The notes beneath the pieces are model-generated. The model had not been told where the DNA came from and did no database searches. It worked only from the letters and a program-made list of their open reading frames with translations. 64,000 nt of DNA from Octopus sinensis (lineage: Eukaryota). The position numbers and the translations under genes were made by a program. Shown in pieces: positions 4,883-40,772 of the stretch; the stretch's first letter is position 1; each line of letters opens with the position of its first letter. The DNA lies in the NCBI RefSeq assembly GCF_006345805.1, contig NC_043007.1:32426001-32490000 (forward strand), read 5' to 3'.

Positions 4883-5013
4883 CTGCCATCATTAGGAGGT
4901 TTGGGCCGGAATGGTTCTTCAACTTCAACTATTTCTTTGTTGAAACCTTGAGATATTAATTTCGCTCTAATTGGTTTGAACTGTTGACGAAGGGTTGGCA
5001 TCCAACTGGAGTA
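4883..5013 (-). CDS. QSER1-like: Coding exon B2 (phase 0-2): YSSWMPTLRQQFKPIRAKLISQGFNKEIVEVEEPFRPKPPNDG
   Basis: cttccatttcag acceptor, gtagga donor, 131 nt. Confidence 0.9.
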
Positions 5014-6139
5014 CTGAAATGGAAGATTAGGAAACACTGAAACAGATTCATTCATCATTACAAATTATTTTGTGAGCATGGGAACTGCTTGGTACCTTGG
5101 GTGAATACCTTCTACTATGGCCCCAAGCTGTCCAAAGCCTTATGAAAGAGTTTGGACAACAGAAACTAAAAAGGAGCCCATCATGCATATGTACATGTGC
5201 ATGAGTGAGTGTTTGCACATGTTTGGGAGTGTTTGTATCTCCTTGTCTTGATACTGGAGGCTAGTTGTAAAAGAAATGTTACCATCATGCCAGAGATACC
5301 ATTTGTTTGCAATCTTTCATGAAAATATGCCTGGCCATTGGGTTGTTAGTGTATGACAGACCAGAGATATATCAAATGACTTGGAAACAGGCGAAGGTTA
5401 ATGACAGGAAGAGCATCTGGTCATAGTAAACCTGTCTCAATGAATTCATCAGAGCCATGCAAATGCGGAAAAATAGGCATTAAAAACAAACTTGACGATG
5501 ATTTCCATATATAAATGCATTTGATTTGTCACTGAAAGTAAATTAGCAAGTTTTTGTGATTTTCCATTTACTGTTAGGTTGGAAGGAAAATCCTGTGACA
5601 TTTTTGACATGATCACTTCAAGACTACTTTTTCAATTCTAATGGTAAGGAAGCATAAATTTCTACATTCTAATTTTTCCCCCCATTTTTTTGCATATTAC
5701 TTTATACAAAAACTTATACTGGCTGCCCCCTTTTTAAAATTAGTTTAGATTAGATCCATACCAGACACTGCATACTGTATGAATTTAAAAGGGCTAACTC
5801 AATATCTCTATTTGTTAATGCTGGAAGGAATCACAGGAAGTTAGTGATGTCTAACAAGATTGGAAGAATGACACCATATTCAAGATAGGGGATAGAAACC
5901 AATGCAAGACCTATTGATAGATTTCTTGATATATATATATATATACAGCTGGGATGATCCTCAAAGAAATGCTGCTCAATAGTCTGAGAAAGTTTACAGT
6001 AATTCCAGCATAAACTGACAAATAAAGAAGTGAAACAGAACTGGTGCATGTGTTGATTATTGGCATAATGACCCTACCACAATACAAAATAAAAAGCACA
6101 TTGAAAACTGTAAATGAAACATCACTAACATGATTACAT

Positions 6140-6520
6140 CATCATCATCGTTTAACATCCATTTTCCATGCTAGAATGGGTTGGATGGTTCGACTGGGGT
6201 CTAGGAAACCAGGAGGCTGCACCAGGCTCCAGTCTGATCTGCTGGATGCCCTTCCTAACGCCAACCACTCCGTGAGTGTAGTGGGTGTTTTTTACGTGCC
6301 ACTGGCACAGGGGCCAGAGGAGGCTGGCAAACAGCCACGATCGGTTGGTGCATTTTACGAGCCACCAGTACGGAAGCCAGTCAAGGCGGCGCTGGCATCA
6401 GCCACGTTCGAACGGTGCTTTTAACGTGTCACCGGCACAGGTGTCTTAACTACAATTTCCATTTGATTTTCATTCTGATGTTGTTGTTAATGTACTTGAC
6501 TCAATAGGTCTCCTCAAGAA
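6140..6520 (-). mobile_element. RTE-tailed short retroelement
   Basis: catcatcatcgtttaacatcc...ctggatgcccttcctaacgccaaccac family sequence. Confidence 0.8.
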
Positions 6521-6623
6521 CAGCAGGTCACTCTACAATCCAAGATTACCGATAGAGAAAAAATTTTTTATAATTCATAATAAATACAGAAGACATTTTA
6601 TTGTAAAATGAAGAAGTGCTTAC

Positions 6624-6764
6624 TGTAGGAACAGCTCGGTGTCGAATCTTCCCATCTTCTATGATTAATTCATATTTGTGTAACATCTTTCCATTTTCAA
6701 TTTTCCATATGGGGTAACTTTCATAGTTTGAAAGGTCCTTAACTTCAATAATAAACTTTCCGGG
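6624..6764 (-). CDS. QSER1-like: Coding exon A2 (phase 0-0): PGKFIIEVKDLSNYESYPIWKIENGKMLHKYELIIEDGKIRHRAVPT
   Basis: tgttcacag acceptor, gtaagc donor, 141 nt, inside ORF 6546-6896. Confidence 0.9.
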
Positions 6765-8619
6765 CTGTGAACAATTCAGAAAAAGAAACACAAACATGAG
6801 TTGAAATTCTTTCATTTTCATCATAAAACCTTTTAAAGAATTAACTAATTTAAATAGCCTAAATTTATCAAAACAGTTACAACAGAACTTGTACATGTAG
6901 AAAGGATAACAAACTTAAAGAAATTACAAATTAATTAATTAATTATGAAAGTAACGAAGAATATATTTTAGCAGATCTATCAAATCACAACAAAATATGG
7001 TGGCACACTTTTGTGAACAAACATATTAACATTTTGACGAATGTTTTTAGTAATTAATATAAATAACCCATAATGATTTTAATTTATTTTATTGCTAAAT
7101 AAACTTCTAAACTGGTAAAAATTGATAATATTATCTGGAGAAGAAATGTTTATATGACAGCTAATACTTTCTAAATATAGTAACACTACTAACTGGTTGA
7201 AATTAGCTTAAAAACTAGGATATATTAAAGGACCGTTAAAATACAAGTTGCAGGTTTTAAAACTAGTTAATCACATATGTTTAGGGTAGAGGAATTATAA
7301 TAAAGCTACAAAACGGTCTGTGCATTTTCATAAATAATACTACTACTATAAACAGCCAAATATCATAAATGATTGCACAGGTGTTTAAATTTATAAAAGT
7401 GTATTTATTCCTAAAACATATTAAGTTTGAAGTGTGTGCATGTGTATATGTACATGTGTATATACATGTGTAATAATATACTTCTAAATTACCCCATATA
7501 CATACAAATTATTTCTAGGAGAAAAACAACAACAAACAATGAAACTGCTTCCGAAATTCACATGTACATGTGCATTTGAATTTGTGCGCACACATACCAG
7601 TGCGTGGGAGAGCACATGTATGCACACGGTTGATATTCTGAAGCAATTTTAAGAATAACAACCAAACATTTAATGACGGGGGACTCAACACCAGTAAAAT
7701 TTGTTTTCACTTGACGGCTAATTCAATCAGTGGCTGAATTAGCCATCAAGTGACACTTGGAATTCAAGTTCAAAATTAATTTTATATCTGTGTATCTACA
7801 TATATGTAGATACACACAGATATGTCTGCGTATCTACATACACACTCATACACATATATGTATACAAACACACACATATACATGTATGTATGTATATAAA
7901 TAAATATAAATATATCTATATATGTATATCATCGTTTAACATCTGCCTTCCATGCTAGCATGGGTGGGACTATGTATATATATATATACACACACACACA
8001 CATATACACATTCACACATATATAGACATGCTTATACACATATATATACACACACACACACTCATACACAAACATATATGTCAATACACACACAAATTAT
8101 GTGGATGGCAACATCTTAATATCTTATCGAGTGTGACCCCCATTATGCTAAAATCTACCGATGCGGTGCCAACTTGTTGTGGGTCCCAATGATAATGCTG
8201 ATGAAGACATACGAGAGCCTGTTTAAGACCAAGGTGCCACTACACACTGGCAGCACTTCAACCAACCTATGAGCCAGAGAAGCATGCAAGTAGAGATCAT
8301 ATCGTCGTCAAAGAAACATCTAACATCTCAACTGCCAATACAAATCTACAGCCGTTTCAGGTTCCGAAAAGCTTGAGTCCTATTTTGTGTCAGGGGAAAA
8401 ATGAAAATGGCACAAAATGTAACCAACACATGAAATTTTATGGTGACAAATGCTTGTGCAACACATCTGCTGTTCTCTAAATGTTTGAAGCCATTAAAAC
8501 AGCAACAAGAAAAACAGGAATGATACCACCAAAAGCTATAAACACTGAAATTTTCTAGTGAGAGAGTCTGTCTGTCCTGTGGATTTACATGGGAGAATAT
8601 AAATGCATATATACATATC

Positions 8620-8870
8620 ATCATCATTGTTTAACGTCTGTTTTCCATGCTGGCATGGGTTAGAAGGTTTGACTGGGGACTGGTAAGTCAGTAGGTTGCA
8701 TCAGGCTCCAATCTAATCTGGCAAGGTTTCTACAGCTGGATGCCTTTCCCAATGCCAACCACTCTGAGAGTGTAGTGGGTCCTTTTTACGTGCCACCAGC
8801 ACAGGAACCAGCCGGTGGGGGACGGGCATCGACCATGTTCGGATGGTTCACTTTTACGTGCCACCGGCAC
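8620..8870 (-). mobile_element. RTE-tailed short retroelement
   Basis: Same family sequence as 6140-6520. Confidence 0.75.
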
Positions 8871-8927
8871 AATATATATATATAAAATATATATATATAT
8901 ATATATAAAATATATATAAAAATATAT

Positions 8928-8959
<32 letters not shown>

Positions 8960-9045
8960 GTTAATCCAAACATGAAAATACAACAACACGAGGATGTGGA
9001 ACAAGTATAGTGTTATTGGATGCTCAGGAAAGGAAAGAAAGGAGG

Positions 9046-9080
9046 ATTTAACGTTTCAAGCAGAGCTCTTCGTCAGAAAA
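9046..9080 (-). ncRNA. Minimal hammerhead-like motif in a Penelope-type terminal repeat (about 8960-9150)
   Basis: Minus strand reads UUUU-CUGACGA-AGAGC-UCU-GCUU-GAAACGUU-AAAU; the repeat is flanked by (TA)n on both sides. Confidence 0.65.
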
Positions 9081-9153
9081 ATAGGAAAAGGAAAGATCCA
9101 AGGAAGGGAAGACAGGGGAAAGAAAATCGCCAACGATACACACGCGGTCATAT

Positions 9154-9187
<34 letters not shown>

Positions 9188-9839
9188 CATACATGTAACA
9201 AATCTATATATACATACACACACATATATATATATCATCACTATTTAACGTCCATCCATTTCTATGTTGGTTTGGGTTGGACAGTTTGACAGGAGCTGGC
9301 AGCCAGAGGACTGCACCTAGCTCCACTGTCTGCTTTGGCATGGTTTCTATGGCTGGATACCCTTCCTAACACCAACCACTTTACAAAGTGGATTGGGTGC
9401 TGGCCATTGACTCTTTGACAGGTTATGTTTTCTTATCCTGTAGGGTACCCCAAATCACCCTCCTAAACAAGTAAACTTGTTGGGGGTCGGAGTCACTAAC
9501 AATCCAGTCATACACAAGATGCAGATCTTTAGTTCCACAGACGTTTAACCATACATGAACACAGGCATTCATACACCCACACAGACTTAGAACTAGTTTA
9601 TACAATACAAAGTACCTTTCCTTAAGTCTTACTAAAAATAACAGCGTTACAGATTGCACAAATGTTAAAATATTAAAAATGTATTTATTCAGAACATGTA
9701 AAGAGCGTGTGTGAATGTGTGTGCCTATGTGAGAAGTATAATTCTTTACACACACAAATTATCAAAAAAAAAAAACAGGAAAACAAATGACAAAGCTCAA
9801 TCTAAATCCAATACATACAAACACACACCAATATATATT

Positions 9840-10260
9840 TCTATATATATAAAATTATATATATAAGTTATAGATATATATAAAATTATAAAATTTCATA
9901 TATATATAATCATAAAATTATATATATAAAATCATAAAATTATATATATATATATAATCATAAAATTATATATATATATCATAAAATTATATATATAAAT
10001 CATAAAATTATATATATAAAATCATAAAATTATTATATATAAAATCATAAAATTATATATATAAAATCATAAAATTATATATATAAAATCATAAAATTAT
10101 ATATATAAAATCATAAAATTATATATATATAATCATAAAATTATATATATATAATCATAAAATTATATATATAAAATCATAAAATTATATATATAAAATC
10201 ATAAAATTATATATATATAATCATAAAATTATATATATAAAATCATAAAATATATATATA
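9840..10260. repeat. Minisatellite, 22-24 bp unit atcataaaattatatatataaa
   Basis: Direct tandem repetition with a variable (TA) count. Confidence 0.9.
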
Positions 10261-10403
10261 TATACACACACCAGAGTAAGCACATGAATGTGAAACAAGG
10301 TGGAAAAAAGAGTACTCAAATACCAGACGTAGAGTAATATGCTTTATTTAAAAGCAGCAGAAATATAACAAAAGCTGTTACTCGGAGTTTCATGTTTTTT
10401 TAA

Positions 10404-10446
10404 CAAAACTGTCCGACGAACGTGAAACTCCGAGTAACAGCTTTTG
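10404..10446 (+). ncRNA. Hammerhead-like motif with collapsed stem II, inside a 60-bp-arm inverted repeat (10337-10478)
   Basis: CAAAACUGU-CCGACGA-ACGU-GAAACUCCGAGUA-ACAGCUUUUG; stems I and III pair. Confidence 0.55.
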
Positions 10447-11292: not shown

Positions 11293-11325
<33 letters not shown>

Positions 11326-11482
11326 GAATTTTTTGTGTAATGAGATAAAAAAAACCATGGCTGTATAGATAATATAGCATTTATAGATAGAAGGTCTTAC
11401 AGCTGTTTCTAGGATATTAATTAATAATAATATCCCTTCATCACATCGAAACTAACTATGACTTAACTTTTCCTCTCACACC

Positions 11483-17814: not shown

Positions 17815-17979
17815 GTATGTTTTTATGTTTAGTTATAATAGAAACAATTTTACATTAACCTGAAGGGTTACTTTAGTAGAGTACTAACCTATTAAGAACT
17901 TTACTGACAGTGACTGCAAAGCTTCAACCAGTTGAGCCATCATCAAAAGCTATAATAGTCTTGTTTAAGAATAACAAAC

Positions 17980-17984
<5 letters not shown>

Positions 17985-18010
<26 letters not shown>

Positions 18011-18016
18011 TACATA

Positions 18017-18057
<41 letters not shown>

Positions 18058-18248
18058 ATTATATACATACATATATACATACATATACATACATATATAT
18101 ACATACATACATATATATATATACATATATAAATATATATATATATGCATACATACATATATAAATAAATATAAATATATATATATGCATACATACACAC
18201 ACACACACATATAAATAAATATAAATATATATATATATATGCATACAT

Positions 18249-18312
<64 letters not shown>
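17985..18312. repeat. Compound (TA)/(TACA) microsatellite
   Basis: Direct reading. Confidence 0.95.
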
Positions 18313-18315
<3 letters not shown>

Positions 18316-18514
18316 GTTTGTAAAATACTATTATATCAAGACAGAACTAGTTTTTCATTTATGTCGCTTAAATAAAGAATTCTAGAGTTAGTATTGAATT
18401 TCCTATTTACTTAATGCAACAGTTAGAACATTATTCCACATGATTTTCAAGAATTAAATTTATAGATTATTTGGGGGGAATATCAAGAGCAAAAGATCAT
18501 GATGCTGTAAGATG

Positions 18515-22833: not shown

Positions 22834-24079
22834 TACACACACACATGAAGAATAGAAAGTTTTTTTAGAATCTTAAATTATTTTGGAACATCATCAGAGA
22901 AAAAGAATTTTTTCTTTTCTTTTTTTTTCTTCTTTTGGACATTGTTTTAAATTAATAGCAAGATGACGTAAGCCAAATTAGAAAGGTAAAAACAGATGTG
23001 AAGCAAAATGATATGATGTAATGAATGTAACAGTGGTGTGGTGGTGTTGATTAGCACATCAGTAAGAAATAAAACTGAATATTGATTTCAAAGTAATGTC
23101 CAAAACAGTATCAGAATTATAATAATTGAAAAATTCTAAACAACAATTAAGCACAAACAAAACCAATGTGTGATTCCTGATGCCATTCATAAATGTTTAC
23201 TCAATCTTACTGAAGCATTCATCATATTCTCAGAATATAACCGGCTATATTAATTTTTTTTTTTTTTTTTTTTTTTTAATTATCAATCAAATACAGACTA
23301 TTATTTCTTAATTAACACATAATTTCAGAGAACAACAGACCAGATTGAAGGAAACAACTATGATGAAAATAATAATAATAATAATAATATATTCATAGAA
23401 TTAGTAATTAATTAATGATCGAACACTTAAAAATGATTTGGTTTAATATATCAAAATATCAAAATAAAATAACACATTCTGTTTGAATATCTAATGAGCC
23501 AAAATATTGGACACCGTCAGTAAATTGATAATTTCTTGTTGGCAAATTTATAAAAGAAAATAAATTCAAAGCTTACATCTCAACAACATAAACTGGAGGC
23601 AATCAGTTACACAACACAAGAATAAAATCTAAAATATGTAGAATTTTAAATCAAAGAAACCTCGTACATACACTCAACACAAATGAAATGAAGTACAAAA
23701 ACATAGGCAACAGCTAGATTAAGCTTTGTCTGGTAGACATATAAAAGAATTTTTTAAAAAATCAATAAGCAGATATATATCAATTTAGATCAGTTTAAAT
23801 AACGATAATTAATTGCCAAACAATATTCAGTTAGTACTTCTAATGTAATTGCTTCATTAACAATTTTAAACGAAACATTTCAATGAAATTACTGAGGACT
23901 GAAATAAGAGTTTCAAGGAATACCTATCTGGTTCCAAGTTACCATTAAATCTATTTATTACCATAAAAGGAAAATAACATTCAACTTGCAAGTTACAGAA
24001 ATGAGGCTTTTCTTGAAATTCAGATATTTGTTGTTTTTGTTTTTGTTCCCCCTTTTCAGTTCTTTTTTTTTAAAGTGTT

Positions 24080-24300
24080 GCAGCTTACTTGGTGACCATC
24101 ACATGCGTTGATGGCATGCAAAAAGCACCCAGTGCACACTGTAATGATGGTTGGCATAAGGAAGGGCACCCAGCTGTAGAGAACATGCCAAAACTGGCAC
24201 TGGGGCTTGGCGCAGCCCTGCAGCTTGCTGGATCTTGTCAAACCGTCCAACCCATGCCAGCACGGAAACTGGACGTTGAGTGGTGATGATGGTGATGATA
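24080..24300 (+). mobile_element. RTE-tailed short retroelement
   Basis: ggaagggcacccagctgtag...ccgtccaacccatgccagcacgg...tgatgatg. Confidence 0.7.
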
Positions 24301-26388
24301 ATTGAATCAATGTTTAAATCGTTGTTAATATTATTATCACCATCATCATCACTATCATCAACGTCCCTTTTAATGTTAATTAAATGATGATTCAAAAAAA
24401 CTAATTACATTGTATCTGAATTTTGAAAAAAAAGAAAAGAAGAAAAAAACCCACTTCTGCAAAATATAAAGTGAAATTAGAAAAGTTAATTGTAATTAGT
24501 AAATAAGACACCAAGAAAATACAAAAGTTGACAGAATTAGTCTATATTCAATGTAGAACAATTTCAGATCAGGTACAGAATCAAAACATTGTTGATAACA
24601 CATTCACAAGAAAGTCGTCTACGTCTATAATTATTTCAATGAAGTGCCTTGTTTAAAAAGACAATCTTACCCTATGGAAATTAATATTCTCCTAGAGTAT
24701 TCGATGATAAGTGAAAAATACTAAATTAAATATGAAATTATCAAACAGCTTTATAACTATGCTATATCTGCTTATTTCTGGTTTAGATAATTATAGCAAA
24801 ATAAATAATATGTAATTTAAGCATTTCTAATAAATTATGTTTAATGACCTGTAACTGAAATTTTAAATTTATAAACGGTAATTTTAAGGTAAAGAACTGA
24901 ATGAGAAAATGTCTGGAATTAATTTTCATTGATAGCAGATTCCTTAACTTTTAGTAATTAAACTAGACATATCCAACCCAAATATTCTACCTGTTTTGTG
25001 TTCAAACCAGCTAGATCGGGCCTCTCACACCTACCCTACAATATCATTATAAAAGTATACAATCACATCATTGAAATCTCAGAGCTACGAGATAATGCAT
25101 GATTAATTCAAAAACAATATGAATAAATAAGCATTTCATTTGACGGAATACTAAAGGGTTAAAGACTAAATCAAAATATAGAACATGAGAAATATGGCAT
25201 CCAGGTTATTCTTTTGAACCAATTGAAAATGAAGAAGTAATCTCTACAAAGTAACTGCCAACATTAGCTACAATGCAAATTAAAACGCAACATTTCATGT
25301 CAACCTTGCACTAAATTATAAACAGATAAATAGATATGAAGATAGATCTGTTTAATATAAGAGAAAGAAATTTAAATTATGGAGCAAAAGAATCTAATTC
25401 TGTATTTAAGTTTTGTTTTTATCTTTCGATAGATTTGGTGTTTTTGTAAAAGAAAGCTTGTTCTTGCTTTTCTTCGAAAATTACAAAGCTCATAATTAAA
25501 ATCCTGTATGTTGGAACCAAAGATATTAATAACGTAGAAATTAAATGCAATGTGATTTTAAATAAGTATGAACTCTAGAAATTTAAAATAAGATATCATT
25601 AAATATCTACGTGTGCTTAAGTGTGATTTGTGGACAGGTGAGGTTAGAATGGAAATATGAAAATACTTGAACAAAGCAACCAATGTGGAATAATAAATAT
25701 CTATAACTTCAGAAACTGCAAATATAAGACACAGCCTTAAATTTCAACAATTGATAAATTCTTTTCACAGCTTTATGAAAAAGAGATTAAATTTTTCTTT
25801 GAATATTCAACTTTCATTTAAAAAATTTTTTTTTCTTTTTGTTTCCTTCAAAATAATTTGAAGAATAAAGTACTCTTATTTTGGAACATGACAGAGGGAT
25901 TTTGTTAAGTTATGGTAAAAATATTTTTGAAACAATAATCTTTAAGCTAGATAAAACTAGCTGTATGAACAATCTCATACCATCAACATAATAGGACTGA
26001 ATTTCTTGGTTCTTCTTTAGGATACTGCAAGAAATTCGAACACAACCTCAACTATTTTTACTGTTCCAGAAATCTAACCATAACTTTTATATCAATTATC
26101 ACAACTACGCATGTTTTAAACCCAAGGGGAAATGCGATGAAAGCTTGAAATGTTGAGTTTGGAGATACTTGTACGAGCTAATTTTTAAAATGGAAAAGTG
26201 GAACATGTACAGACGTCGATATAAAATGCCCTAATTTATGGAATTAGAATGAGCAGTTAAATAAAAATTACGTATCTGAACTTGGTTTAAAGAAAATCGC
26301 TCCTTATATATATATACATATATATAAAATATGTGCATATGTATACATGTGTGTGTATATATGTATGTATGCATACATATATATATAT

Positions 26389-26656: not shown

Positions 26657-27409
26657 CGCACACACATACACATGTATGTACAGACACACACATATATATA
26701 TATATACATACATTCCCTTAAATTAAGTACTAAATGAACTATTAAATAACAGACCTTATGCTACATTTTGTTTAAATAAACATCCTTTACATAACTTGTG
26801 CTATATAATAACCAAGAAATACACCAAAAATAGCCAAACATTACAGAGTCACAAACTCAACTTTTTTCAAGTTCTTATTTTTTGTTTATATATTTTGTAT
26901 TGTTTTTTTTTATATATATTTTATTATTATTATTATTAATCTTTTGTGATCAAATGGTAATAAGTGCAACTGATTTACAGAAGGAAATTACATGAAAACA
27001 AAAAAAAAAAAAAAAAACTTCAAACTTCAAAAAAAAAAAAAAAAAAAAAACCATAACAGTGCACCCCCTTATTCCAATTTGGCACACAACCAACTCGGTG
27101 GTCGTGTTTCGGTAGTGGCAATAACCAGTGAGTAGATATTTACAAGTGATCATTAAAACATACATGTGGAGAAGAAACGGAACATCTACAGCTATATGGA
27201 GTAGTAGTAGTAGTAATAGAAGAACAAAAACTTCAATATTTAAAATCAAAGTATTCGAAGACAGAAAAAAAAAAAAAGAAGAAAATCATAGATAAACTTT
27301 TAGGTCAGTCATCTGGCAAACCTGTCTGCTAGATTAATGAAGATTAACAGATTATATTACAACTAGAGCAAATAATATTTTAACTTTCTGTTATGTCGTA
27401 TTTTTACTT

Positions 27410-27514
27410 TTCATACACACAACACACAGGCATATATATATGTATATATATTATATACTATATATAATATATATATATATACACACACATATATATACAT
27501 ATATATGTACATAC

Positions 27515-27548
<34 letters not shown>

Positions 27549-27662
27549 TATATATGAATATACTATATATATATGTATACATACATATGTATATACTATA
27601 TATATATATGCATATACTATATATATATATGCATATACTATATATATATATGCATATATATA

Positions 27663-27700
<38 letters not shown>

Positions 27701-27702
27701 TA

Positions 27703-27741
<39 letters not shown>

Positions 27742-27752
27742 TATGTATATAC

Positions 27753-27785
<33 letters not shown>

Positions 27786-28105
27786 CATATACTATATATA
27801 TATATATACATACATATATATGTATATATATATATATATGTATATACTATATATACATATATATATGTACATAATATATATATATATATATATGTACATA
27901 ATATATATATATATATATGTACATAATATATATATATAATATGTACATAATATATATATATATATGTACATAATATATATATATATATAATATGTACATA
28001 ATATATATATATATATATATATATGTACATAATATATATATATATATATATATATATTATTTATATATCATATATAGATATAAATATATACACACACATA
28101 TATAA
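27410..28105. repeat. Compound (TA)n minisatellite with gcatatactat and gtacataat subunits
   Basis: Direct reading; source of the YIYI ORFs. Confidence 0.95.
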
Positions 28106-30082: not shown

Positions 30083-30680
30083 TTAAACATTTAAATGAAG
30101 TAGATGGATATTCTGCTTCTGAATCGATTACTTGTGTCTTCTACACTGCAATTGCTTTAGTTTCGGCACCGGCACCCAGTCTCAGATCAAAACATTTGCA
30201 ATGCAAGTACATCGCCAAAGATTTTTTTGCTAAAAACATTAAATGTGTAAAATAAACTATTTTGTGTGCGTGTATGTGTATAAAGTCTATAAGGCTGCTG
30301 GCACAGCCATGTGGCTAAAATGTCTGCTTTGTAACCATGTCTCAAAGTTCAATCCTACTACATGGTACCTTAGGCAAGAGAGGGGGGGGGGCTTTTCTCA
30401 CAGTTTTGGGTTGTGCTGAGCCTTCTAGAAACTGGGGCAGGCCAGGAAAACTGTGGAAGCCTTCCGGGCACTCTGCACATTGTAGTCCAAAAGACAACCT
30501 TGGTACACACTGATTCTGCATGAAGACATCAATTAGAGAGAGACAAATGTCGGCGGCATACCGAGCCACCTGCATTTACTCTGTAATTCAATGAGTATGG
30601 AGTTGAGTTGATCGAATGGCTGGAATACTTATCATCCAATATGACGGGAACCATTTACCTTTTGGGATATATGTATGCAA

Positions 30681-30717
<37 letters not shown>

Positions 30718-30787
30718 TGACATCTTCATCATTACCATCATTACTTCATGTCCATTTTTCTATGCTTGCACGGGTTGGTGTACGAAC

Positions 30788-30818
<31 letters not shown>

Positions 30819-30837
30819 CATACATACATATACACAT

Positions 30838-30888
<51 letters not shown>

Positions 30889-31152
30889 CATATATATATA
30901 TGTAAATTAAATAAGTAAAAAGGAATTCCATAGGTACTGATATGAATAAGTTACTAAATAGTAAAAACAAATTTTAAAAAACCTGTTTTGTTGCCATCTC
31001 CCTACTACCCATTATTAGCTTAAAGTGCCCCCAGCAGTAGAATGGCAGATGACAACTACTTCATTGTTGACGCCATGAACAGTTAAAGAGTTATTTCCAC
31101 TTGCCAACTGTGACAAAATAAATGTGTTCATAGGTTGCGCTACGATTCACAC

Positions 31153-31369
31153 CTCAAAATTATGTACAGGAGCATCTTCTATGTCGGATTCAGATTCACT
31201 TTCAGAAGACTCGGAATTCCTCTTCTCATCATCGTCGTCGTCATCTACTTCGTCGTCTTCTTCTTCACTTTCACTGTCGGACCTTTCTTTGGCCACCAAG
31301 GGTGATGGAGCGAGATCGGGCTGTTGGGCAGAAAGCTCTTTCATTTGAGGACTGGGTTCTGATATTTCA
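31153..31369 (-). CDS. QSER1-like: Coding exon (phase 2-0), module 2 acidic linker: EISEPSPQMKELS...EEEDDEVDDDDDDEKRNSESSESESESDIEDAPVHNFE
   Basis: tttcatttcag acceptor, gtgtga donor, 217 nt; matches supplied ORF 31147-31344. Confidence 0.85.
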
Positions 31370-32034
31370 CTGAAATGAAACAGTTAGGATTGGAAAAATT
31401 GTATATTTCATATCTTAAAATATACAAAATGAAAGCAACACATCATAGTCTAAAAGCCAGAAAGAAAGGGACAACAGGTGATAAAATTAGGGCTTATACA
31501 AAAGTAAACGAAACAGTTCATTTTATTCTCTAATTCGTTTCAGTCATTTGATTGTGGCCATGCTGGAGCACTGCCTTTTGGTCAAACAAATCGACCCTCG
31601 GGATTTATTCTCTGTAAGCTTGGTACTTATTCTATTGGCCTCTTTCACTGAACCGCTAAATTACGGGGGCGTAAACACACTGACATCGGTTGTCAAGAGA
31701 TTGGGGATGGGGAGACTAACACACACATATCGGTGTCACGTAAAAAGCACCAACTGATCGTGGTCATTGCCAGCCGCTCCTGGCACCTGTGCCGGTGGCA
31801 TGTAAAAAGCACACACTACACTCATGGAGTGGTTGGCGTTAGGAAGGGCATCCAGCTGTAGAAACAATGCCAGATCAGACAGGAGCCTGGCTTCCCAGAT
31901 CCCGGTCAAACCGTCAAACCCGTGCTAGCACGGAAAATGGGCGTTAAACGATGATGATGATGATGATAGATTGTTCAAATTGCATGTTGGTAGAATAGCT
32001 CTTTCTCTAGGGTAACCCTTCTTTTTGTTCTTTA

Positions 32035-33183: not shown

Positions 33184-33215
<32 letters not shown>

Positions 33216-33261: not shown

Positions 33262-33392
33262 CTGTTTTTATATGAGGGTCTTGGAAAAAATTCATCTTCT
33301 ACTTCTACAATTTCTGAATTAAACCCTTGAGAAATTAATTTGGTTTTAATAGGACTGAACTGTTTTCTCCAGGCTGCAGTCCAAGTTCTATA
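33262..33392 (-). CDS. QSER1-like: Coding exon B1 (phase 0-2): YRTWTAAWRKQFSPIKTKLISQGFNSEIVEVEDEFFPRPSYKN
   Basis: ctttctttaacag acceptor, gtaagg donor, 131 nt; paralogous to exon 4883-5013. Confidence 0.9.
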
Positions 33393-34561
33393 CTGTTAAA
33401 GAAAGAGATCAAAGGAAAATATTATCACAGAAATTCAATGACAAAGAAAACTACAGTAATTAACTCAGTTTAATAAAACCAATAGAAGATTTTGTAATTA
33501 TATTCAGTGTTGACCAACATAATGCTTTAAGAAAATTTACATATGACAAAATGACAAAATGGAGTACAAGAATGAATTTTTTACAGGAGAAGACATCTCA
33601 GACCTGTTGCTTTGAGGGTTACATACCCCCTGATACTGTTTTAGAGTAAAACTAGAAGTACTATTTTCTTATACAGAATTAATTGTTTCCATGATGTTCC
33701 ACATAATTTTCCTGAAACACCTATCATTAAATATATGAGTTTATATTTGACACAACTGACATAGCTAAGTTAAAACCACTTTCCTTCTCCAAAAACACCC
33801 GACAAATATGAAAGGAGACTGGAATCAACAGAATCTTAGCTGATGCTGGATCGAACTTATAATCTGGAGAGAAGTTTTTACAGATATGTCAGTAGAAAGC
33901 AGAGTCGTGAAGTGTAAGAGAGAGAAAAAGACAAAGAGAGAATGCTATTTTGCAGTGAATTAAAATTAGTTTTCTGTAGTCGAAATCTTCAACAAAAAAA
34001 GAATCCTAAAATCCACATTTTGATGAAAAAAAAAAAAAAAAAAAAAATTTTTTTTTAAAATTCAGAAACAAAATTAGTTGTTGCAAGAAAAAAATTATTA
34101 AAAAGCTGAATCACAAATCTGCTGAGAGCTGTGAGCACACTGAAAGTAACTTTAAATATAAAAGTACCGTTAGATATAAATGTATAAATATAAACAGACA
34201 GAAAGTTCCATGACTGAGTAAGCGATGACAATTCCAAAGATTAAGGACTGTTCCAAAGACAGCCTTAACTTCGTATTATAAAGTATTTTAAAAGTAAAGG
34301 ATGCACATGAAAGAATGATAAACTGACTTAGGTTAGTATATAAGAAAACCTTCTGTTGTGATGTTATTAATATCTCAAAGACCATTCAGGCATCAATACT
34401 CACATGTACACAATTTTATAAAATGGATATGTTCACAGCAGAGGCGAAGGACTAAATAATGGTAGTTGCAGAATGTCCAAGGCTGGAAGGTGATGAAAGA
34501 TGCTTTTAAGAACTTAGTATTCTTGTTGGAAAGTAAAGGTTTTCAATTCCTGAATTTATAC

Positions 34562-35110
34562 TGCCGGTGGCATGTAAAAAGCACCAACCGATCGTGGGCG
34601 TTGCCAGCCTCCCCTGGCATCTGTGCCGGTGGCACGTAAAAAGCACCAACCAATCGTGGGCGTTGCCAGCCTCCCCTGGCATCTGTGCCGGTGGCACGTA
34701 AAAAGCACCAACCGATCATGGGCGTTGCCATCCTCCCCTGGCATCTGTGCCGGCGGCACGTAAAAAGCACCAACCGATCGTGGGCGTTGCCAGCCTCCCC
34801 TGGCATCTGTGCCGGTGGCACGTAAAAAGCACCATCCGTACATGGTCGATGCCAGCGCCACCTTGACTGGCTTCCGTGCCGGTGGCATGTAAAATGCACC
34901 AACCAATTGTGGCCACTGCCAGCCTCCCCTGGCACGTAAAAAGCACCCACTACACTCACAGAGTGGTTGGTGTTAGGAAGGGCATCCAGCTGTAGAAACA
35001 CTGCCAGATCAGATTGGAGCCTGGTGCAGCCTCCTGGCTTCCCAGACCCCGGTCGAACCGTCCAACCCATGCTAGCATGGAAAACGGACATTAAATGATG
35101 ATGATGATGA
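34562..35110 (+). mobile_element. RTE-tailed short retroelement with internal 62-bp tandem array
   Basis: Unit starts at 34562, 34624, 34686, 34748, 34810 (period 62); ends aacccatgctagcatggaaaacggacattaaatgatgatgatg. Confidence 0.85.
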
Positions 35111-35577
35111 TATGAGACATGTGTGAAAGTCATAACATGATATTCATATAGAAATTGCAGAGGATCTACAGTAATTTAAAAGAAACAACTTTAGTCTGAT
35201 TCCCTGAGATGTGATATTGTTAACTTATGAGAAAGACTGGATATGAAACAAGGAAGAGCAATAAGCAGGAGAGGTATTGATTGATGCCTAGAAACCAAAC
35301 CAAAGCACTGATATGGACAAGTAAATGGATGATGGATTCTGGCTCAACAAAAACCAGGAGTTGGAGATTCACAGAGATCAAGGAAGAAGATGAATGATGA
35401 GGTAAGTTTAGGTCTGAAAACGATGCAAATAGATGCTCTCAGAATAATGATGCTGGTGCTGATATAGAGGTGGCAATGGCTAATGATTACAGCAGTTAAA
35501 ATCTATGGCTTAGAAAATGGTATGATAACCATTCTGTTACACCATTTTAAAATTTCAATTTCGGGTTTTTATCTATA

Positions 35578-35966
35578 TCTATATAAAGCTGAAGTTGTCT
35601 GTGTATGGCAGGTTTGGTAGCCTTCAACTAACACTATCTCCTCCGAGACCCTGCGGCGCAAGTTGACCAAAATTGAGAGTATGTATGATAGAAGAAGGCT
35701 TGCTCTTCCTTCCATAGAAGAAAAAATTCAAATCGGACCGTGTTAAGACCAAAAATTATTTACATAAAAAAGGTGCTTTTTTTCTATGAAAATCCATTTT
35801 TTATGATTTTTTTAACTGCTGTGTCGCCATTTTTCGGTGTATTTTAATCAGAAAAATGTTCACTTAAAGAGAATAACAAGCTACATAATGCAAAATTTTT
35901 ACTTTTCAAAAATTCTAATTCTAAAGGGCCGAAACAAACCCGAGCAACACTGGGCGATACTGCTAG
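35578..35966 (+). mobile_element. Non-autonomous Helitron-type element
   Basis: 5' TC(tatataaagc); 3' subterminal hairpin cccgagcaacactggg then CTAG; inserted between A and T. Confidence 0.75.
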
Positions 35967-36916
35967 TTTAGTTATAAGGTTATTTTTCACATATCATTTA
36001 TGTGAAGGATTATAATGAATTTCAAGACCAAGCTTTTATAAAACTTGGGAGATGTTTATAACCGATACCAAAAGAAAACCTACTGGTTTAGAAAGAATAT
36101 GGTAATGATCAAACATTGCTGAAATGAATGGGGTTTGGCTTATCACAGAAAGAAAACTGAGTAGTGCTTAGTACAAACAGTAATTGCAAATTGCATTCCC
36201 TAATTCCATTCAAATAATAAATTCAGCTGGTAGTTTGGTATGGATGGTAGCAGAACAAATGATGGTATACAAGCTAAAATATCAAGAAATGATAAAGAAA
36301 ACAGCAGAGATAGAGGACTGTCCATGAATTCGATTATCTCTACTAGCTTATAATGTAGCAATTAGCATTTATTATTGTCTAAAAAAAAACAATAAAATTA
36401 GAACAAAGGAAGAGAAGAAGATCAGTGAAAATTCCAAAGTGTAATCAAGGTTTCCTTAAAAACTTGAAGATGGTGTGAAAAACCCTATAAAAAAGATTGC
36501 AGATTATGTAAACAAATAAATTTAAGGTAAATAATATTTTGCGTTTTCTTGAACCCCTAGGACTCATAAAGCTGATTGCTCAGTTTCCAAGTGATCAAAA
36601 TCACATCATCCCCCCACTGAAATGAGCCATCAGTCTGTTGCAGGGTCCAGCACCAGGCACTCTGAGGGGTGGGCGGGTGAGTGGGGTGGCAAGTCGATTA
36701 CATCAACCCCTGTACTTGTCTGCTACTTTATTTTATCAATCCTGAAGGGATGAAAGGTAAAGCCGACCTCAGTGGAATTTGAACTCATGACGTAAAGAGC
36801 CGGAAAAAATGCTGCTGAGCATTTTGTCCGATGTGCGAACAATGCTGCAAGTCAAGAACAACTTTTTGCACTTCAATTCAAAAAGAGACATTTAGAAAGT
36901 ATTCTAAATTACTTAC

Positions 36917-37054
36917 TGTTGGCACAGCTCTGTGTCTAATTTTCCCATCTTCATTTACTAGTTCATATTTTTGAAGTCTTCCCGCTTCAATTTTCCAAAC
37001 AGGAAATTTATCATAATTTTCCATATCTTTCTTTTCTATAATAAATTGATGTTC
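36917..37054 (-). CDS. QSER1-like: Coding exon A1 (phase 0-0): EHQFIIEKKDMENYDKFPVWKIEAGRLQKYELVNEDGKIRHRAVPT
   Basis: aatcttttag acceptor, gtaagt donor, 138 nt; paralogous to exon 6624-6764. Confidence 0.9.
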
Positions 37055-38739
37055 CTAAAAGATTAAATAAGACAACTTGAATTAAGGCTAACTGCATAAT
37101 GTCAGTATAAACGTAATTGATAAAATATTTCCTTCGCTTGTCTTATTCAATGGGTAAATAAGTCTCAATTTACCGTTGCAAATAAACCAGTAACTTACAA
37201 TTCCATTAACTCCATCCAATGCTACGTAATTACTGCTACATTTGTATTTACTAGATAATAAACGCATACCAAGTCTACTATTTTAGCCCACCCCTTTCAC
37301 CAACCTTACCTCCTTCCATCACTTCTATCCTGTTTTGATCATTAGACTCAGCACATTCTTTCATCCTGAAATCTACATCTCTCTGCAACTACCTCACCGT
37401 GGGAGTTTCCCCCCACACAAAAAAAAAAGACCATTATAAAAATAAAAATAAAAACAGAAGGAAAAAAAATAAAGCAACATCAAAAAGTACATTAGACATA
37501 TGAATCTGACTCAGCTGTTCATATCCTCAGCCTAGGACTGCCTAGAAAAGTTATGGATATTACTAGTTCTCATCAGATTGAATTAATGGAACAAAAAGTT
37601 TTTGGAACAATTAAACCTTGTATTCCATTCCTTGTACATCAATCTCTATTATGTATACACTTGGACGTCAAGGATCAATTAGTATTTTTGATCTGAGATT
37701 TGGTAATAATGAATGGTTACATTTTAAATGAAGAATGTATCAATAAATGAAAAATAATCATAAGCTAAAACAAATGTATTTTACTTGTTAACTGTTTCCG
37801 AAACAATCGGGCTATATTATTCCTAGAAGGATATTTCCATTTCAGTAAAGGATTACGTTGAGTAGAAAGCAGAAGAAGAAAAAAGAAGGAAGAAAGAAAA
37901 AAAACTATTTATCTAGCTTGATCATATCACAAGTTTTAGCCTATGTCAACCACTGCAGTGCTTGCATTTCAAAATGATCAAAAGTCTATTGTACAGTTAA
38001 GAAAAATGAAAAGAAAAGTGTGAAGAAAAATGAAAATGGCAGAAAGCATAATTTGTATCTATTTAAAAAAAGTTTATTCTATTTAAATATTAATATCTTT
38101 TTGTTGTCTAGGATCTGTCACAGCACTTATAATATCTGCTATACTACTGAGTTATATTACAAGTAATTCACAGAAACACATTACAAAAGGCCATTAACAT
38201 ACATACATACAAAAACCTGTGTGTTGTGTGTAAGAGTCAAATAATATAACCATTATATGAGATAGTCATTACTCAACAATCTAAATAGTAGAAATACTTT
38301 AACCTTTTAACTTTCGAGCCAGCCATACTTGGCCTAAATATTCTGCCTGATCTATGATAAAACTAACCAGATCTGACCTCTTGCACTTACCCTGCAAATA
38401 TTTGATCACATCATTGAGATTATGCATGATATTAGTTCAAAACAATGTGAATTGAATAAATAAGCATTGCATTTGACACAGAAATCTGAATGCTAAAGAG
38501 CCAACGACTGCACGTGTGTATTCTTTGCAGTGCCTGATGAAGTAGCCAGATGGTTGAGTAGCAAAAGAGATACAACAGTTGCATATATCTGTTGTCACTC
38601 AAGAGAAACACTGAATGAATCAGAAAAGACCCCTTCATATATTTCTTAGCGTTACTACATTAAACACTCCACCACCCAATCACTCCTTGCAACAAACTAT
38701 ATACATACATATATACAAATATATATTTATATATATATC

Positions 38740-39310
38740 ATCATCTTCATTTAATGGCCATTGTCCATGCTGGCATGGGTTGGACAGTTTGACCAGGGAT
38801 GGCAAGCTGGAGAGCTGCACCAGGCTCCAGTCTGATTTGGCAGGGTTTCTACAGCTACTCCAAACGCCAATCACTTTACAAGTAAACGGGTGCTTTTATG
38901 TGGCCCCAGCACACAAAATACATACACACAGACACACACATCTACTAGACTTACAGAACTACAGCCTTATAAATAAATGTGACCACCTGGACAACCTTTT
39001 AAGAGAGCAGTGACCATCTAAAAACTAAATACTATACACTTTTTTTTTATATATACCCATCATCATTTAACGTCCGCTTTCCATGCTAGCATAGGTTGGA
39101 CAATTTTGACTGGGGGCTGGTGAACCAGGCCCCAATCTTGATCTGGCAGAGTTTCTACAGCTGGATGCCCTTCCTAACGCCAACTACTCTGAGAGTGTAG
39201 TGGGTGCTTTTCATGTGCCACCGGCACAGGACCAGTCAGGCAGTACTAGCAATGATCTCACTCGAATCTTTTTACACATGCCACCAGCACAGGTGCCAGT
39301 AAGGTGACAA
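38740..39310 (-). mobile_element. Two RTE-tailed short retroelements (about 38740-38910 and 39060-39310)
   Basis: Family sequence appears twice in the same orientation. Confidence 0.75.
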
Positions 39311-40669
39311 GGTTATTCTCCTTGTCCAACAGTTAATATGTTGTTTACCTATCTCTTGCATTTTTGCTTGCACTCATTTGACCTCTTTTATAGTTGGTCT
39401 GAAGACAAAAGCTTAAAGGAACCTTGTACCCAACATATTATTCCTATTGTGACACCCGGGAACACACAAAAAATTTGTTTCAGAAGGGTATCTTAAGGAC
39501 ACAAGCTGTGCTTTGGTATTTCTATGACACAAACAAACTCCTTTACTATAATTATTACAACAACAACAACAAATATAAAAACAAAGGACCCAAACAAGAT
39601 GATATGTTCATGACAAAGTGTTGGATTAGGGATCAGGTTAAATTAGTAATTAAATGAGGGTTTGTTTATTTGGTTTTGAGGCCTACCAAAGTTTTGATTC
39701 CACCAAAAGTGATAAGTAGCAATAACTAGTTATCTCTATAGAATAAATCTGCTTATTGGAGATATTCAGCATCAACTAAGTCATTCTTTGAACCACAGCA
39801 GCAGCAACAACAACAACAATAATAATTTTTCAGTTATGACAAATTCATAAGACAGAACTTAAATTAAAATAAAATGATAAGCAAATAAAATCCAGCTAAA
39901 CAACAGCAACAAATATTTTTTAAAAAATCAACTGAAATTTAATTTACATTTCAAAGAAGGTTTTACTATCTATTCTAGAGACAACAAAAAAAGAAGAAAA
40001 AATTTTTTTTTTTTAAATACAAAAATAAATGAAGCCTGAGATATTAGTTATGAACTAAACATAAATGGATTAATTTGAAATAATAATAAAATAAATGTTA
40101 ATTATAAACATAATCATTAGCATGTTCACCTAATCACCACTGTGTGGTTCAACTGCTATCAGAAGGTATTGAATTCTTTCACAAAGTACATCTTTTCCAG
40201 ATGTAGATTAGTTTTAATATTAATTTACAATAGCTACTGACCCTGGAGAGATAAAAAGTGTTAAAATTAGGTTCAAAGTTTACCAACATTTCCTCATATA
40301 CCATTCATGTACTTATATTCTGGCACATTCCTTACGACTACAAATTTCCCCCTTTTCTCTTGCTACCATGAATCAGTTTTCGTTACATCAACCCATTGAG
40401 GACAGTTCTCTAACTGCCCCGTTCCATATCTCCTTTGATTCACTTCAACACTGGCTTACACTTTACCAATCGTTACTAGAAGCAAAACAACATTCTTTGG
40501 TAGTTAACCAAAGAGAAGCATTATGTTTACGAGTGCACACTACTTAAATTCAGCAAAATCAATAAACGTCTAATTACAATTGTATTAAAATAATTATCTT
40601 CTCAATTAAAACGAGAACAAAACTATTCTACATTAATTAGGATCAAGTAATGTTACATCAAGGATTTAC

Positions 40670-40772
40670 CTCAAAGTTTTTAGTACCATTTTCACCTTCT
40701 TCTGGTACTTCAGTTAACAGAGGTTCTAACATATTCAAAGCAAAATTTTTCCGTCCTCTGCCTCTTGATCGG
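40670..40772 (-). CDS. QSER1-like: Coding exon (phase 2-0), module 1 linker: RSRGRGRKNFALNMLEPLLTEVPEEGENGTKNFE
   Basis: tttatttaatag acceptor, gtaaat donor, 103 nt; ends in NFE like exon 31153-31369. Confidence 0.8.

What the first reader, a model, noticed from the sequence alone, without database searches (positions are those of the whole stretch)
4883..40772. Tandem duplication of a three-exon module in a QSER1/PRR12-like gene
Seen in sequence: module 1 (40670-40772, 36917-37054, 33262-33392) and module 2 (31153-31369, 6624-6764, 4883-5013) share the phase pattern 2-0/0-0/0-2. Both linker exons end in NFE. By hand alignment A1/A2 are 31/47 identical, including a perfect EDGKIRHRAVPT, and B1/B2 are both 131 nt and 24/43 identical. 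Both copies are open, with canonical splice sites and many synonymous differences, which suggests purifying selection. Established knowledge: vertebrate QSER1 is a chromatin factor that cooperates with TET1 to protect regions from de novo DNA methylation. Inference: as I recall the family has one copy of this WxIE-type domain before DUF4211, so a doubled domain could be a lineage-specific chromatin-factor architecture.
Basis: partly seen in the sequence, partly recalled or inferred. Interest (0 to 1): 0.8.

Follow-up and report, generated by a model that had tools for sequence, protein, structure and literature searches.

The report
Doubled domain in octopus QSER1/PRR12-like gene
The octopus version of the QSER1/PRR12 chromatin-factor gene carries an old, in-frame tandem duplication of three exons. 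The protein therefore has two copies of a small, uncatalogued beta-rich domain where nearly all other animals sampled have one; this is real but only modestly surprising.

Summary
All six exons lie on the minus strand with AG/GT splice sites.

The window is Octopus sinensis LOC115217116. The 286-aa peptide is an exact substring of RefSeq isoforms X1 and X2. The full protein carries Pfam DUF4211 (63.9 bits against a cut-off of 27) directly after copy 2, so the gene is QSER1/PRR12-like.

The repeated unit is about 85 aa and has no Pfam model. AlphaFold2 folds it confidently as an autonomous beta-rich domain, and Foldseek finds no convincing PDB match.

The unit occurs once in about 26 named gastropod and bivalve species, two annelids, a brachiopod, a nemertean, an insect and a fish PRR12. 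It occurs twice in three Octopus species and in two transcript contigs from a deeply diverged, unidentified species that groups with Octopus.

A tree places the duplication on the cephalopod lineage, before those two lineages split. Both copies are under purifying selection (omega about 0.1). Copy 1 evolves roughly tenfold faster but keeps every family-invariant residue.

Three caveats apply:
- Doubling is not unique. Short bivalve paralogs and a hemipteran protein also carry two units.
- A predicted isoform (X3) skips exon A1.
- The function of the unit is unknown.

The parts
51151..51281 (-). Upstream exon Ea (...ELGSDSGSDTDH...YDSDKDPAWTPFAM), first exon of this gene inside the window
   Evidence: Boundaries were found by requiring AG/GT sites and an exact match to XP_029642576.1. 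The DPAWTPF motif is conserved in Haliotis.
48504..48613 (-). Exon Eb (EKKPATFDETEFPENKPKRARSRGRARGRITNRLNS), a basic RGR-rich segment
40670..40772 (-). Linker exon L1 (RSRGRGRKNF...GTKNFE), module 1, phase 2 to 0. Its terminal NFE is the first conserved motif of the unit.
   Evidence: NFE aligns with the family-wide [DN]F[QE] motif. The same intron position exists in Lottia.
36917..37054 (-). Exon A1, first half of unit copy 1 (138 nt, phase 0-0). It is skipped in predicted isoform X3.
   Evidence: (E=7e-14)
33262..33392 (-). Exon B1, second half of unit copy 1 (131 nt, phase 0-2)
   Evidence: E=7e-8
31153..31369 (-). Linker exon L2, module 2 (217 nt). It encodes a 72-aa acidic Ser/Glu/Asp-rich segment that ends in NFE and is predicted to be disordered.
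   Evidence: pLDDT is below 50 for model residues 101-172.
6624..6764 (-). Exon A2, first half of unit copy 2 (141 nt, phase 0-0)
4883..5013 (-). Exon B2, second half of unit copy 2 (131 nt, phase 0-2)
3484..3599 (-). Exon D1, start of the DUF4211 region (SLERQYEDDPLVESFNIY...)
   Evidence: Pfam DUF4211 covers residues 373-438 of the window peptide.
1921..2018 (-). Exon D2, second DUF4211 exon. The rest of DUF4211 lies beyond the window's left end (seen in L005).

Best explanation
**Shown**
- The window holds the 3' part of Octopus sinensis LOC115217116, the single octopus member of the QSER1/PRR12 (DUF4211) family.
- In the ancestral molluscan gene, three consecutive exons encode an ~85-residue beta-rich unit that sits directly before the DUF4211 region. 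These are a linker exon ending in [DN]F[QE], exon A and exon B. The same intron positions are present in the limpet Lottia.
- The three-exon block starts and ends in phase 2, and its length is a multiple of three (372 nt in module 1, 489 nt in module 2).
- The duplicates form one clade. They arose after the lineage split from gastropods and bivalves, and before Octopus diverged from a second lineage whose synonymous sites are saturated against Octopus.
- Both units are spliced into the same mRNA.
- Both units are under purifying selection.
- Copy 2, next to DUF4211, is almost frozen.
- Copy 1 evolved about tenfold faster. It fixed lineage-shared changes (TYSSWxPxM became TYRTWTAAW, plus a one-residue deletion) but kept all eight family-invariant residues, and it is then conserved.
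- Each unit is predicted to fold on its own as a compact domain of about seven strands.
- The two units are joined by a disordered, acidic Ser/Asp/Glu-rich tether of about 70 residues.

**Inferred**
- One tandem segmental duplication (unequal crossing-over) of the block inserted a second unit in frame.
- The unit is an interaction module of a nuclear scaffold protein. The cephalopod protein therefore presents two tethered binding modules.
- The conserved copy 2 probably keeps the ancestral role coupled to DUF4211. Copy 1 probably has a modified ligand preference or adds avidity.
- Skipping of the 138-nt phase-0 exon A1 (predicted isoform X3) may switch the second module off.
For:
- **Family.** DUF4211 scores 63.9 bits against a cut-off of 27, directly after copy 2.
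- **One locus.** Only this locus in the genome encodes the unit.
- **Copy counts by HMM.** There are two units in O. sinensis, O. bimaculoides and the transcript contigs P0100/P0142. The O. vulgaris model has copy 2 plus only the B half of copy 1. There is one unit in all other long orthologs.
- **Tree.** Cephalopod c1+c2 form a clade with support 99/96. Support is 100/100 for c1 and 97/82 for c2. Branch lengths are 0.39 + 0.19-0.23 for c1 against 0.077 + 0.01-0.02 for c2.
- **Intron positions.** L|A, A|B and B|D1 are shared with Lottia.
- **Selection between copies.** omega = 0.11 with pS = 0.73.
- **Selection between lineages.** For copy 1, pN = 0.18 and omega is at most 0.125. For copy 2, pN = 0.03. 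Overall pS is 0.70.
- **No recent gene conversion.** The identical EDGKIRHRAVPT stretch differs at 6 synonymous sites.
- **Transcripts.** Two independent assembled transcript contigs carry both units in one ORF.
- **Invariant residues.** D, W, K, E, H, T, V and P are all kept in copy 1.
- **Structure.** AlphaFold2 gives pLDDT of about 90 for both units and below 50 for the tether. Copy 1 alone gives mean pLDDT 86 and pTM 0.77.
Against: - **No functional data.** Nothing is known about the function of the unit in any species. There is no Pfam model, no PDB sequence match and no convincing Foldseek match (best E about 0.5, TM at most 0.28). The 'binding module' reading is therefore inference.
- **Thin cephalopod sampling.** The only lineages are Octopus spp. 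and one unlabelled lineage. 'Cephalopod stem' cannot be told apart from 'coleoid' or 'octopodiform'.
- **Exon A1 skipping.** Predicted isoform X3 and the O. vulgaris model CAI9730706.1 lack exon A1, so the second unit may not always be made.
- **Uncertain domain arrangement.** AF2 inter-domain geometry is uncertain (pTM 0.60), and no contact or PAE data were available.
Confidence: 0.8

Rival explanations
1. Copy 1 is a dispensable or decaying relic. It is transcribed in some isoforms but does nothing, and only copy 2 plus DUF4211 works.
For: - Copy 1 evolves about tenfold faster than copy 2.
- Predicted isoform X3 and an O. vulgaris model skip exon A1, leaving a half-unit that could not fold.
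- The near-invariant Gly at the start of the unit is His in Octopus copy 1.
Against: - The frame stays open across a divergence with saturated synonymous sites, and omega is at most 0.125 for copy 1 between lineages.
- All eight family-invariant residues are retained.
- Copy-1-specific substitutions are shared and then conserved between the two lineages.
- The fold is predicted with confidence.
- Copy 1 is present in both independent transcript contigs.
Confidence: 0.1
2. The two modules are mutually exclusive alternative cassettes, as is common after tandem exon duplication. Any one protein would then carry only one unit.
For: Each module is a multiple of 3 nt (372 and 489) and is phase 2-2, so either one could be skipped in frame.
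Against: - RefSeq isoforms X1 and X2 contain both modules.
- Two de novo transcript contigs from separate sequencing runs contain both modules in one continuous ORF.
- The two O. bimaculoides RefSeq models examined contain both units, and the O. vulgaris model contains copy 2 and the B half of copy 1.
- No model that lacks a whole module was seen.
Confidence: 0.04
3. The doubled architecture is ancestral to molluscs or protostomes and was lost repeatedly. The two-unit short paralogs in bivalves would be survivors of the same event.
For: Short paralogs in Sinanodonta, Mactra and Mya have unit-unit-DUF4211. A hemipteran protein also has two units.
Against: - The two cephalopod copies are each other's closest relatives (99/96) and are nested among molluscan single-copy sequences. 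The bivalve short-paralog units fall elsewhere in the tree.
- Both cephalopod copies share the cephalopod-only motif KLISQGFN.
- About 26 named gastropod and bivalve long orthologs have one unit.
Confidence: 0.04
4. The duplication is an assembly or annotation artefact, such as a falsely duplicated haplotype or a chimeric gene model.
For: None found.
Against: - The copies are only 66% identical at the DNA level, and their introns differ in size.
- The same architecture is annotated in O. bimaculoides and in O. sinensis. The O. vulgaris model shows it with exon A1 missing. It also appears in assembled transcripts of another species.
Confidence: 0.01

Closest known systems
[quoted passage not shown]
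   Same: - Both are long, Ser/Pro/Gln-rich, low-complexity proteins with basic RGR/AT-hook-like patches and a C-terminal DUF4211.
[quoted passage not shown]
- A unit of the same family lies upstream of DUF4211 in a vertebrate-like 1681-aa protein of unconfirmed identity (P0130).
   Different: - Octopus has two units separated by an acidic tether. Vertebrate-type proteins show one, and it is only weakly similar (18-19 bits to the molluscan profile).
- Cooperation with TET1 and protection of methylation valleys is known only for human cells (PMC12648955, PMC13174265, both citing Dixon et al. 2021). It is untested in molluscs.
Vertebrate PRR12 (proline-rich protein 12)
   Same: It is the paralog of QSER1 and shares DUF4211 (PMC11050278, PMC12648955). 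A fish PRR12 (P0131) is a distant hit and carries one unit.
   Different: - PRR12 is much longer and proline-rich, with defined AT-hooks.
- The unit lies about 340 residues before DUF4211 in that fish model.
- The octopus gene is probably a pro-ortholog of both vertebrate paralogs. This is inference and no tree was made.
Short two-unit DUF4211 paralogs of bivalves (Sinanodonta KAL3842094.1, Mactra KAL4225547.1, Mya WAR02848.1)
   Same: They have the same unit-unit-DUF4211 architecture. The Sinanodonta protein aligns over 97% of the octopus two-unit region.
   Different: - They are 570-680 aa proteins that lack the long N-terminal region.
- They are separate genes that sit beside the long single-unit ortholog (adjacent locus tags in Sinanodonta).
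- Their first unit is very divergent (branch length 4.2).
- They arose independently of the cephalopod duplication.
Internal domain duplication by tandem duplication of a symmetric exon block (general mechanism of exon shuffling or duplication)
   Same: The duplicated exons are contiguous, in the same order and with the same phases, and the block is phase-symmetric so the frame is kept.
   Different: The duplicates are co-included here, not used as mutually exclusive alternatives.

Membership tests
QSER1/PRR12 family (Pfam PF13926, DUF4211-containing proteins) | C-terminal DUF4211 domain scoring above Pfam's gathering threshold | tested here: met
   - The full O. sinensis protein XP_029642576.1 scores 63.9 bits against a cut-off of 27, at residues 1468-1580.
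- The O. bimaculoides protein scores 63.1 bits.
- The window's own 438 aa score 24.3 bits, because only the first two DUF4211 exons are inside the window.
- A six-frame exon-by-exon genome search with the Pfam model found nothing, which is uninformative.
QSER1/PRR12 family (Pfam PF13926, DUF4211-containing proteins) | Conserved ~85-aa unit (PIW[KR][IL]E ... H ... T[YF]S.W) N-terminal to DUF4211, single copy | tested here: not met
   - The unit is present and directly precedes DUF4211, but in two copies in Octopus.
- It is single in all other long orthologs and in a fish PRR12.
- The departure is in copy number only. Sequence membership of both copies is clear.
QSER1/PRR12 family (Pfam PF13926, DUF4211-containing proteins) | Long low-complexity Ser/Pro/Gln-rich N-terminal region with basic RGR/AT-hook-like motifs | tested here: met
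   The first 1100 residues are 14.5% Ser, 10% Pro and 7.7% Gln. KRGRGRKKK, RRGRGGRG, RGRARGR and RGRGRK motifs start at residues 528, 1022, 1161 and 1178.
QSER1/PRR12 family (Pfam PF13926, DUF4211-containing proteins) | Orthology to QSER1 as opposed to PRR12 | not tested
   Only naming by NCBI of the Haliotis ortholog and a weak hit to a fish PRR12 are available. No tree with vertebrate paralogs was built.
QSER1/PRR12 family (Pfam PF13926, DUF4211-containing proteins) | Chromatin association, cooperation with TET1, and protection from de novo DNA methylation | not testable with these tools
   This is known for human QSER1 only (PMC12648955 and PMC13174265, citing Dixon et al. 2021).
Mutually exclusive exon clusters derived from tandem exon duplication | Only one of the duplicated exons or modules is included in any one transcript | tested here: not met
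   Both modules are present in RefSeq X1/X2 and in two assembled transcript contigs.

The most novel reading that the evidence does not exclude
The ~85-residue unit may be an unrecognised, autonomous protein domain family. It has no Pfam model and no PDB relative by sequence or by Foldseek. It would act as the ligand-binding module of QSER1/PRR12-type chromatin factors. It is modular enough to have multiplied independently in cephalopods (x2), bivalve paralogs (x2), a hemipteran (x2) and unidentified proteins from ENA assemblies (x2-6). In cephalopods, the second copy would have acquired a new specificity, with inclusion controlled by skipping of exon A1.
Probability: 0.3. Interest if true: 0.55.

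Novelty: new variant of a known kind. Interest (0 to 1): 0.35.

Why it matters
QSER1 and PRR12 are disease-linked human nuclear proteins. Their only named domain is a 'domain of unknown function', and nothing is known about how their conserved C-terminus works.

This analysis shows that the conserved region before DUF4211 is a separate unit that folds on its own. Evolution has copied it independently in several lineages. That gives a natural definition of the domain's boundaries and a set of natural variants (one, two and up to six units) for biochemical study.

For cephalopod biology it is one more lineage-specific change in a putative chromatin or DNA-methylation regulator. It is an old, selectively maintained domain gain and not a new kind of system.

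Tried and rejected
- **Pfam on the repeat.** Scans of the 286-aa peptide and of 32 unit sequences found no family.
- **DUF4211 in the genome.** A six-frame search of the whole genome with the Pfam DUF4211 model found nothing. The domain is split by introns and the controls are bacterial, so this is uninformative.
- It was rerun with copy 2 alone.
- **Locating downstream exons.** Genome stretches fetched from G000 are not available as files in Python. Reading the ORF list of L005 by eye was inefficient. Exons were mapped from the RefSeq protein instead.
- **Fold identification.** Foldseek of the 473-residue model and of copy 1 alone against the PDB gave no match better than E about 0.5, so the fold stays unidentified. 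A profile search of PDB sequences gave nothing.
- **More cephalopods.** Two further protein searches at other length ranges found none.
- **Source of the transcripts.** The organism behind runs SRR24189500 and SRR24189503 could not be identified.
- **Alignment design.** Alignment A2 put the homologs onto copy 1 instead of copy 2 and was discarded in favour of A3.
- **Literature.** The Dixon et al. 2021 paper is not held.
- **Readings rejected.** The artefact, mutually-exclusive-exon and ancestral-doubling readings were rejected (see rivals).

Full report
**Observation**

I read the six claimed exons on the minus strand. Each is preceded by AG and followed by GT. Their lengths are 103/138/131 nt and 217/141/131 nt. 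Joined in one frame, they give an uninterrupted 286-aa peptide.

Both linker exons end in NFE, and EDGKIRHRAVPT is identical in the two copies. That is 55/90 residues overall, with 66% nucleotide identity.

The similarity is far beyond chance. In a six-frame search of the whole 2.72-Gb genome with copy 2, the only matches apart from copy 2 itself are A1 (E=7e-14) and B1 (E=7e-8). The same result shows that no other locus in this genome encodes the unit.

**What gene this is**

- The window is G000:C11:32426001-32490000, on a contig of 77,502,973 bases in a genome of 13,516 contigs.
- The 286-aa peptide is an exact substring of its RefSeq isoforms X1 (XP_029642576.1, 1668 aa) and X2 (1649 aa).
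- Using that protein, I fixed all exons inside the window: Ea 51151-51281, Eb 48504-48613, L1, A1, B1, L2, A2, B2, D1 3484-3599 and D2 1921-2018.
- Pfam finds nothing in the repeat region.
- Pfam does find DUF4211 directly after copy 2. The full protein scores 63.9 bits against a cut-off of 27. The window's 438 aa score 24.3 bits, because the domain continues beyond the window's left end.
- The N-terminal 1100 residues are Ser/Pro/Gln-rich with RGR-type basic motifs.
[quoted passage not shown] A fish PRR12 is a distant hit.

It is already annotated, though only as an 'uncharacterized protein'.

**How many copies other animals have**

An exhaustive HMMER search of 1.84 billion representative proteins with copy 2 returned 99 hits. 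I counted units with HMMs built from the two copies and from a 32-sequence alignment.

- **Two units:** O. sinensis, O. bimaculoides, and two transcript contigs assembled from runs SRR24189500 and SRR24189503 (P0100 and P0142). The O. vulgaris model has copy 2 plus only the B half of copy 1.
- **One unit, always just before DUF4211:** every other long ortholog.
  - About 14 named gastropod species and 12 named bivalve species.
  - The annelids Owenia and Capitella, the brachiopod Lingula, the nemertean Lineus and the stick insect Timema.
- **Vertebrate-type proteins:** a fish PRR12 and a 1681-aa vertebrate-like protein each show one weakly similar unit upstream of DUF4211.

Doubling is not unique, however. 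Short bivalve paralogs (Sinanodonta, Mactra, Mya) have unit-unit-DUF4211. A hemipteran protein has two units. Proteins from unidentified ENA assemblies have two to six units, and those checked lack DUF4211.

**When and how the duplication arose**

A maximum-likelihood tree of unit sequences gives three results:
- All cephalopod copies form one clade (99/96).
- Copy 1 of Octopus groups with copy 1 of the other lineage (100/100), and copy 2 groups with copy 2 (97/82).
- The bivalve short-paralog units fall elsewhere.

The event is therefore specific to the lineage leading to Octopus, and it predates the split from the P0100 lineage. That split is deep. The two proteins are 71% identical overall, and synonymous sites are saturated (pS 0.70). 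I could not identify the species, and two more searches found no further cephalopods. 'Cephalopod stem' therefore cannot be separated from 'coleoid' or 'octopodiform'.

In the limpet Lottia, the single unit is split by introns at exactly the same places...CFQ|VGRF......EYT|YTRW... and ...PSDG|SLEN.... The ancestral gene therefore already had the L-A-B exon block. The terminal NFE of both octopus linker exons is homologous to the family-wide [DN]F[QE] motif.

The block is phase 2 to phase 2. Modules 1 and 2 are 372 and 489 nt, both multiples of three. A single tandem segmental duplication of the block therefore keeps the frame. This mechanism is inferred from the anatomy.

**Selection**

- Between the two copies, Nei-Gojobori omega is 0.11 with saturated pS.
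- 25 of the 55 identical residues use different codons.
- The identical 12-residue stretch differs at 6 synonymous positions. Its identity therefore reflects selection and not recent gene conversion.
- Between Octopus and the second lineage, copy 2 is almost frozen (pN 0.03).
- Copy 1 changes more (pN 0.18) but is still constrained (omega at most 0.125).
- Copy 1's branch is roughly tenfold longer.
- Copy 1 still keeps all eight residues that are invariant across the family.
- Its own substitutions are shared by both lineages: TYRTWTAAW in place of TYSSWxPxM, and a one-residue deletion.

This is the pattern of a duplicate that changed early and was then conserved.

**Expression evidence**

Two independently assembled transcript contigs carry both modules in one ORF. 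RefSeq X1 and X2 do too. This argues against mutually exclusive use of the modules.

Predicted isoform X3 (XP_029642579.1) and the O. vulgaris model CAI9730706.1 skip the 138-nt phase-0 exon A1. That leaves only half of copy 1. I could not check read support for this form.

**Structure**

- AlphaFold2 was run on the two-unit C-terminal 473 residues of the O. bimaculoides protein with 24 aligned homologs. It gave mean pLDDT 80.8.
- Both units score about 90 and have the same topology: about seven strands, including two long hairpins, and two short helices.
- The 70-residue acidic linker is disordered.
- The DUF4211 region is a confident helical-plus-hairpin domain.
- Copy 1 alone, with a 32-sequence alignment, folds with mean pLDDT 86 and pTM 0.77. 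The unit is therefore predicted to be an autonomous domain.
- Foldseek against the PDB found nothing convincing for either model (best E about 0.5, TM at most 0.28).
- A profile search of PDB sequences found nothing.
- No Pfam family matched any of the 32 unit sequences consistently.

The fold and ligand remain unknown.

**Interpretation**

The best-supported account is an ancient, selectively maintained, in-frame tandem duplication of a three-exon block. It gives the octopus QSER1/PRR12-like protein two tethered copies of an uncatalogued beta-rich domain.

By inference, the unit is an interaction module. Copy 2 would keep the ancestral role next to DUF4211, and copy 1 would add avidity or a changed specificity. 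A1 skipping is a possible off-switch.

Vertebrate QSER1 cooperates with TET1 against de novo methylation (PMC12648955 and PMC13174265, citing Dixon et al. 2021). Whether that applies in molluscs is untested. I found no paper describing this duplication or the unit.

I rate the finding a new variant of a known kind. It is of modest interest because the models are already public and similar doublings arose elsewhere.

Noticed in passing
window 36917-37054 (exon A1): RefSeq isoform X3 (XP_029642579.1, 1622 aa) and the O. vulgaris model CAI9730706.1 (1603 aa) join L1 directly to B1 (...GTKNFE|YRTWTAAW...). This skips A1 and leaves half a unit. A1 may be a cassette exon.
   Followed up: partly
window 45984-46208 (-), in the intron between Eb and L1: The older O. 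bimaculoides model XP_014781450.1 contains an exon 'WQHEEWDLQKLNARVVLTLKKTPKLH' in place of the conserved ...SDKDPAWTPFAM and Eb sequence. The matching O. sinensis ORF lies in this intron. The exon is absent from the O. sinensis RefSeq models and has no counterpart in the Haliotis ortholog, so it may be a mis-called exon in the old model.
   Followed up: partly
window 48504-48613 and 40670-40772: The end of exon Eb (RSRGRARGR) and the start of L1 (RSRGRGRK) carry near-identical Arg-Gly motifs. Copy 1 is therefore preceded by a basic patch, whereas copy 2 is preceded by a 72-aa acidic Ser/Glu/Asp tract (L2).
   Followed up: no
window 6134-6424, 8673-8885, 24056-24404, 31652-31924, 34506-35175, 38615-39307, 49126-49371, 49860-50249, 63275-63604; also L005 2322-2772: An interspersed repeat family recurs on both strands and gives similar ORFs (...GAFYVPPAQ...PGEAGN.HD.LVLFTCHRH..., ...CTRLQSDLA.FLQLDALPNANHS.SVVGAFYV...). 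It is arrayed in tandem at 34543-35175. This is probably a SINE or transposon relic in the introns.
   Followed up: no
window 17880-18375, 27341-28067, 30587-30973 and many others: Long TA/CA-type microsatellite tracts give 'YIYIYI' and 'HTHTHT' ORFs. The window is 34% G+C, and intron sizes run up to 24.4 kb (L2 to A2).
   Followed up: no
P0013 / P0007 (Sinanodonta woodiana locus tags ACJMK2_020157 / 020156); P0019 / P0123 (Bulinus Btru_072076 / 072078): Several molluscs have a second, shorter DUF4211 gene next to, or two locus tags away from, the long ortholog. In bivalves this short paralog carries two units. Octopus has only the one locus.
   Followed up: partly
P0002 (1367 aa, 6 units), P0003 (763 aa, 4 units), P0020 (805 aa, 3 units), P0067 (727 aa, 2 units), all from ENA assemblies: These proteins of unidentified origin consist largely of repeats of the same unit (about 30% identity) and have no DUF4211 hit. 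The unit therefore also occurs outside the QSER1/PRR12 context.
   Followed up: partly
DUF4211 region, residues 359-452 of the 473-residue model (O. bimaculoides P0001 C-terminus): Cys359, His416, His420, Cys429 and Cys452 are invariant across 24 molluscan and annelid sequences. This could be a metal-binding site. The second Cys of CQAC is Ser in heterobranch gastropods.
   Followed up: no
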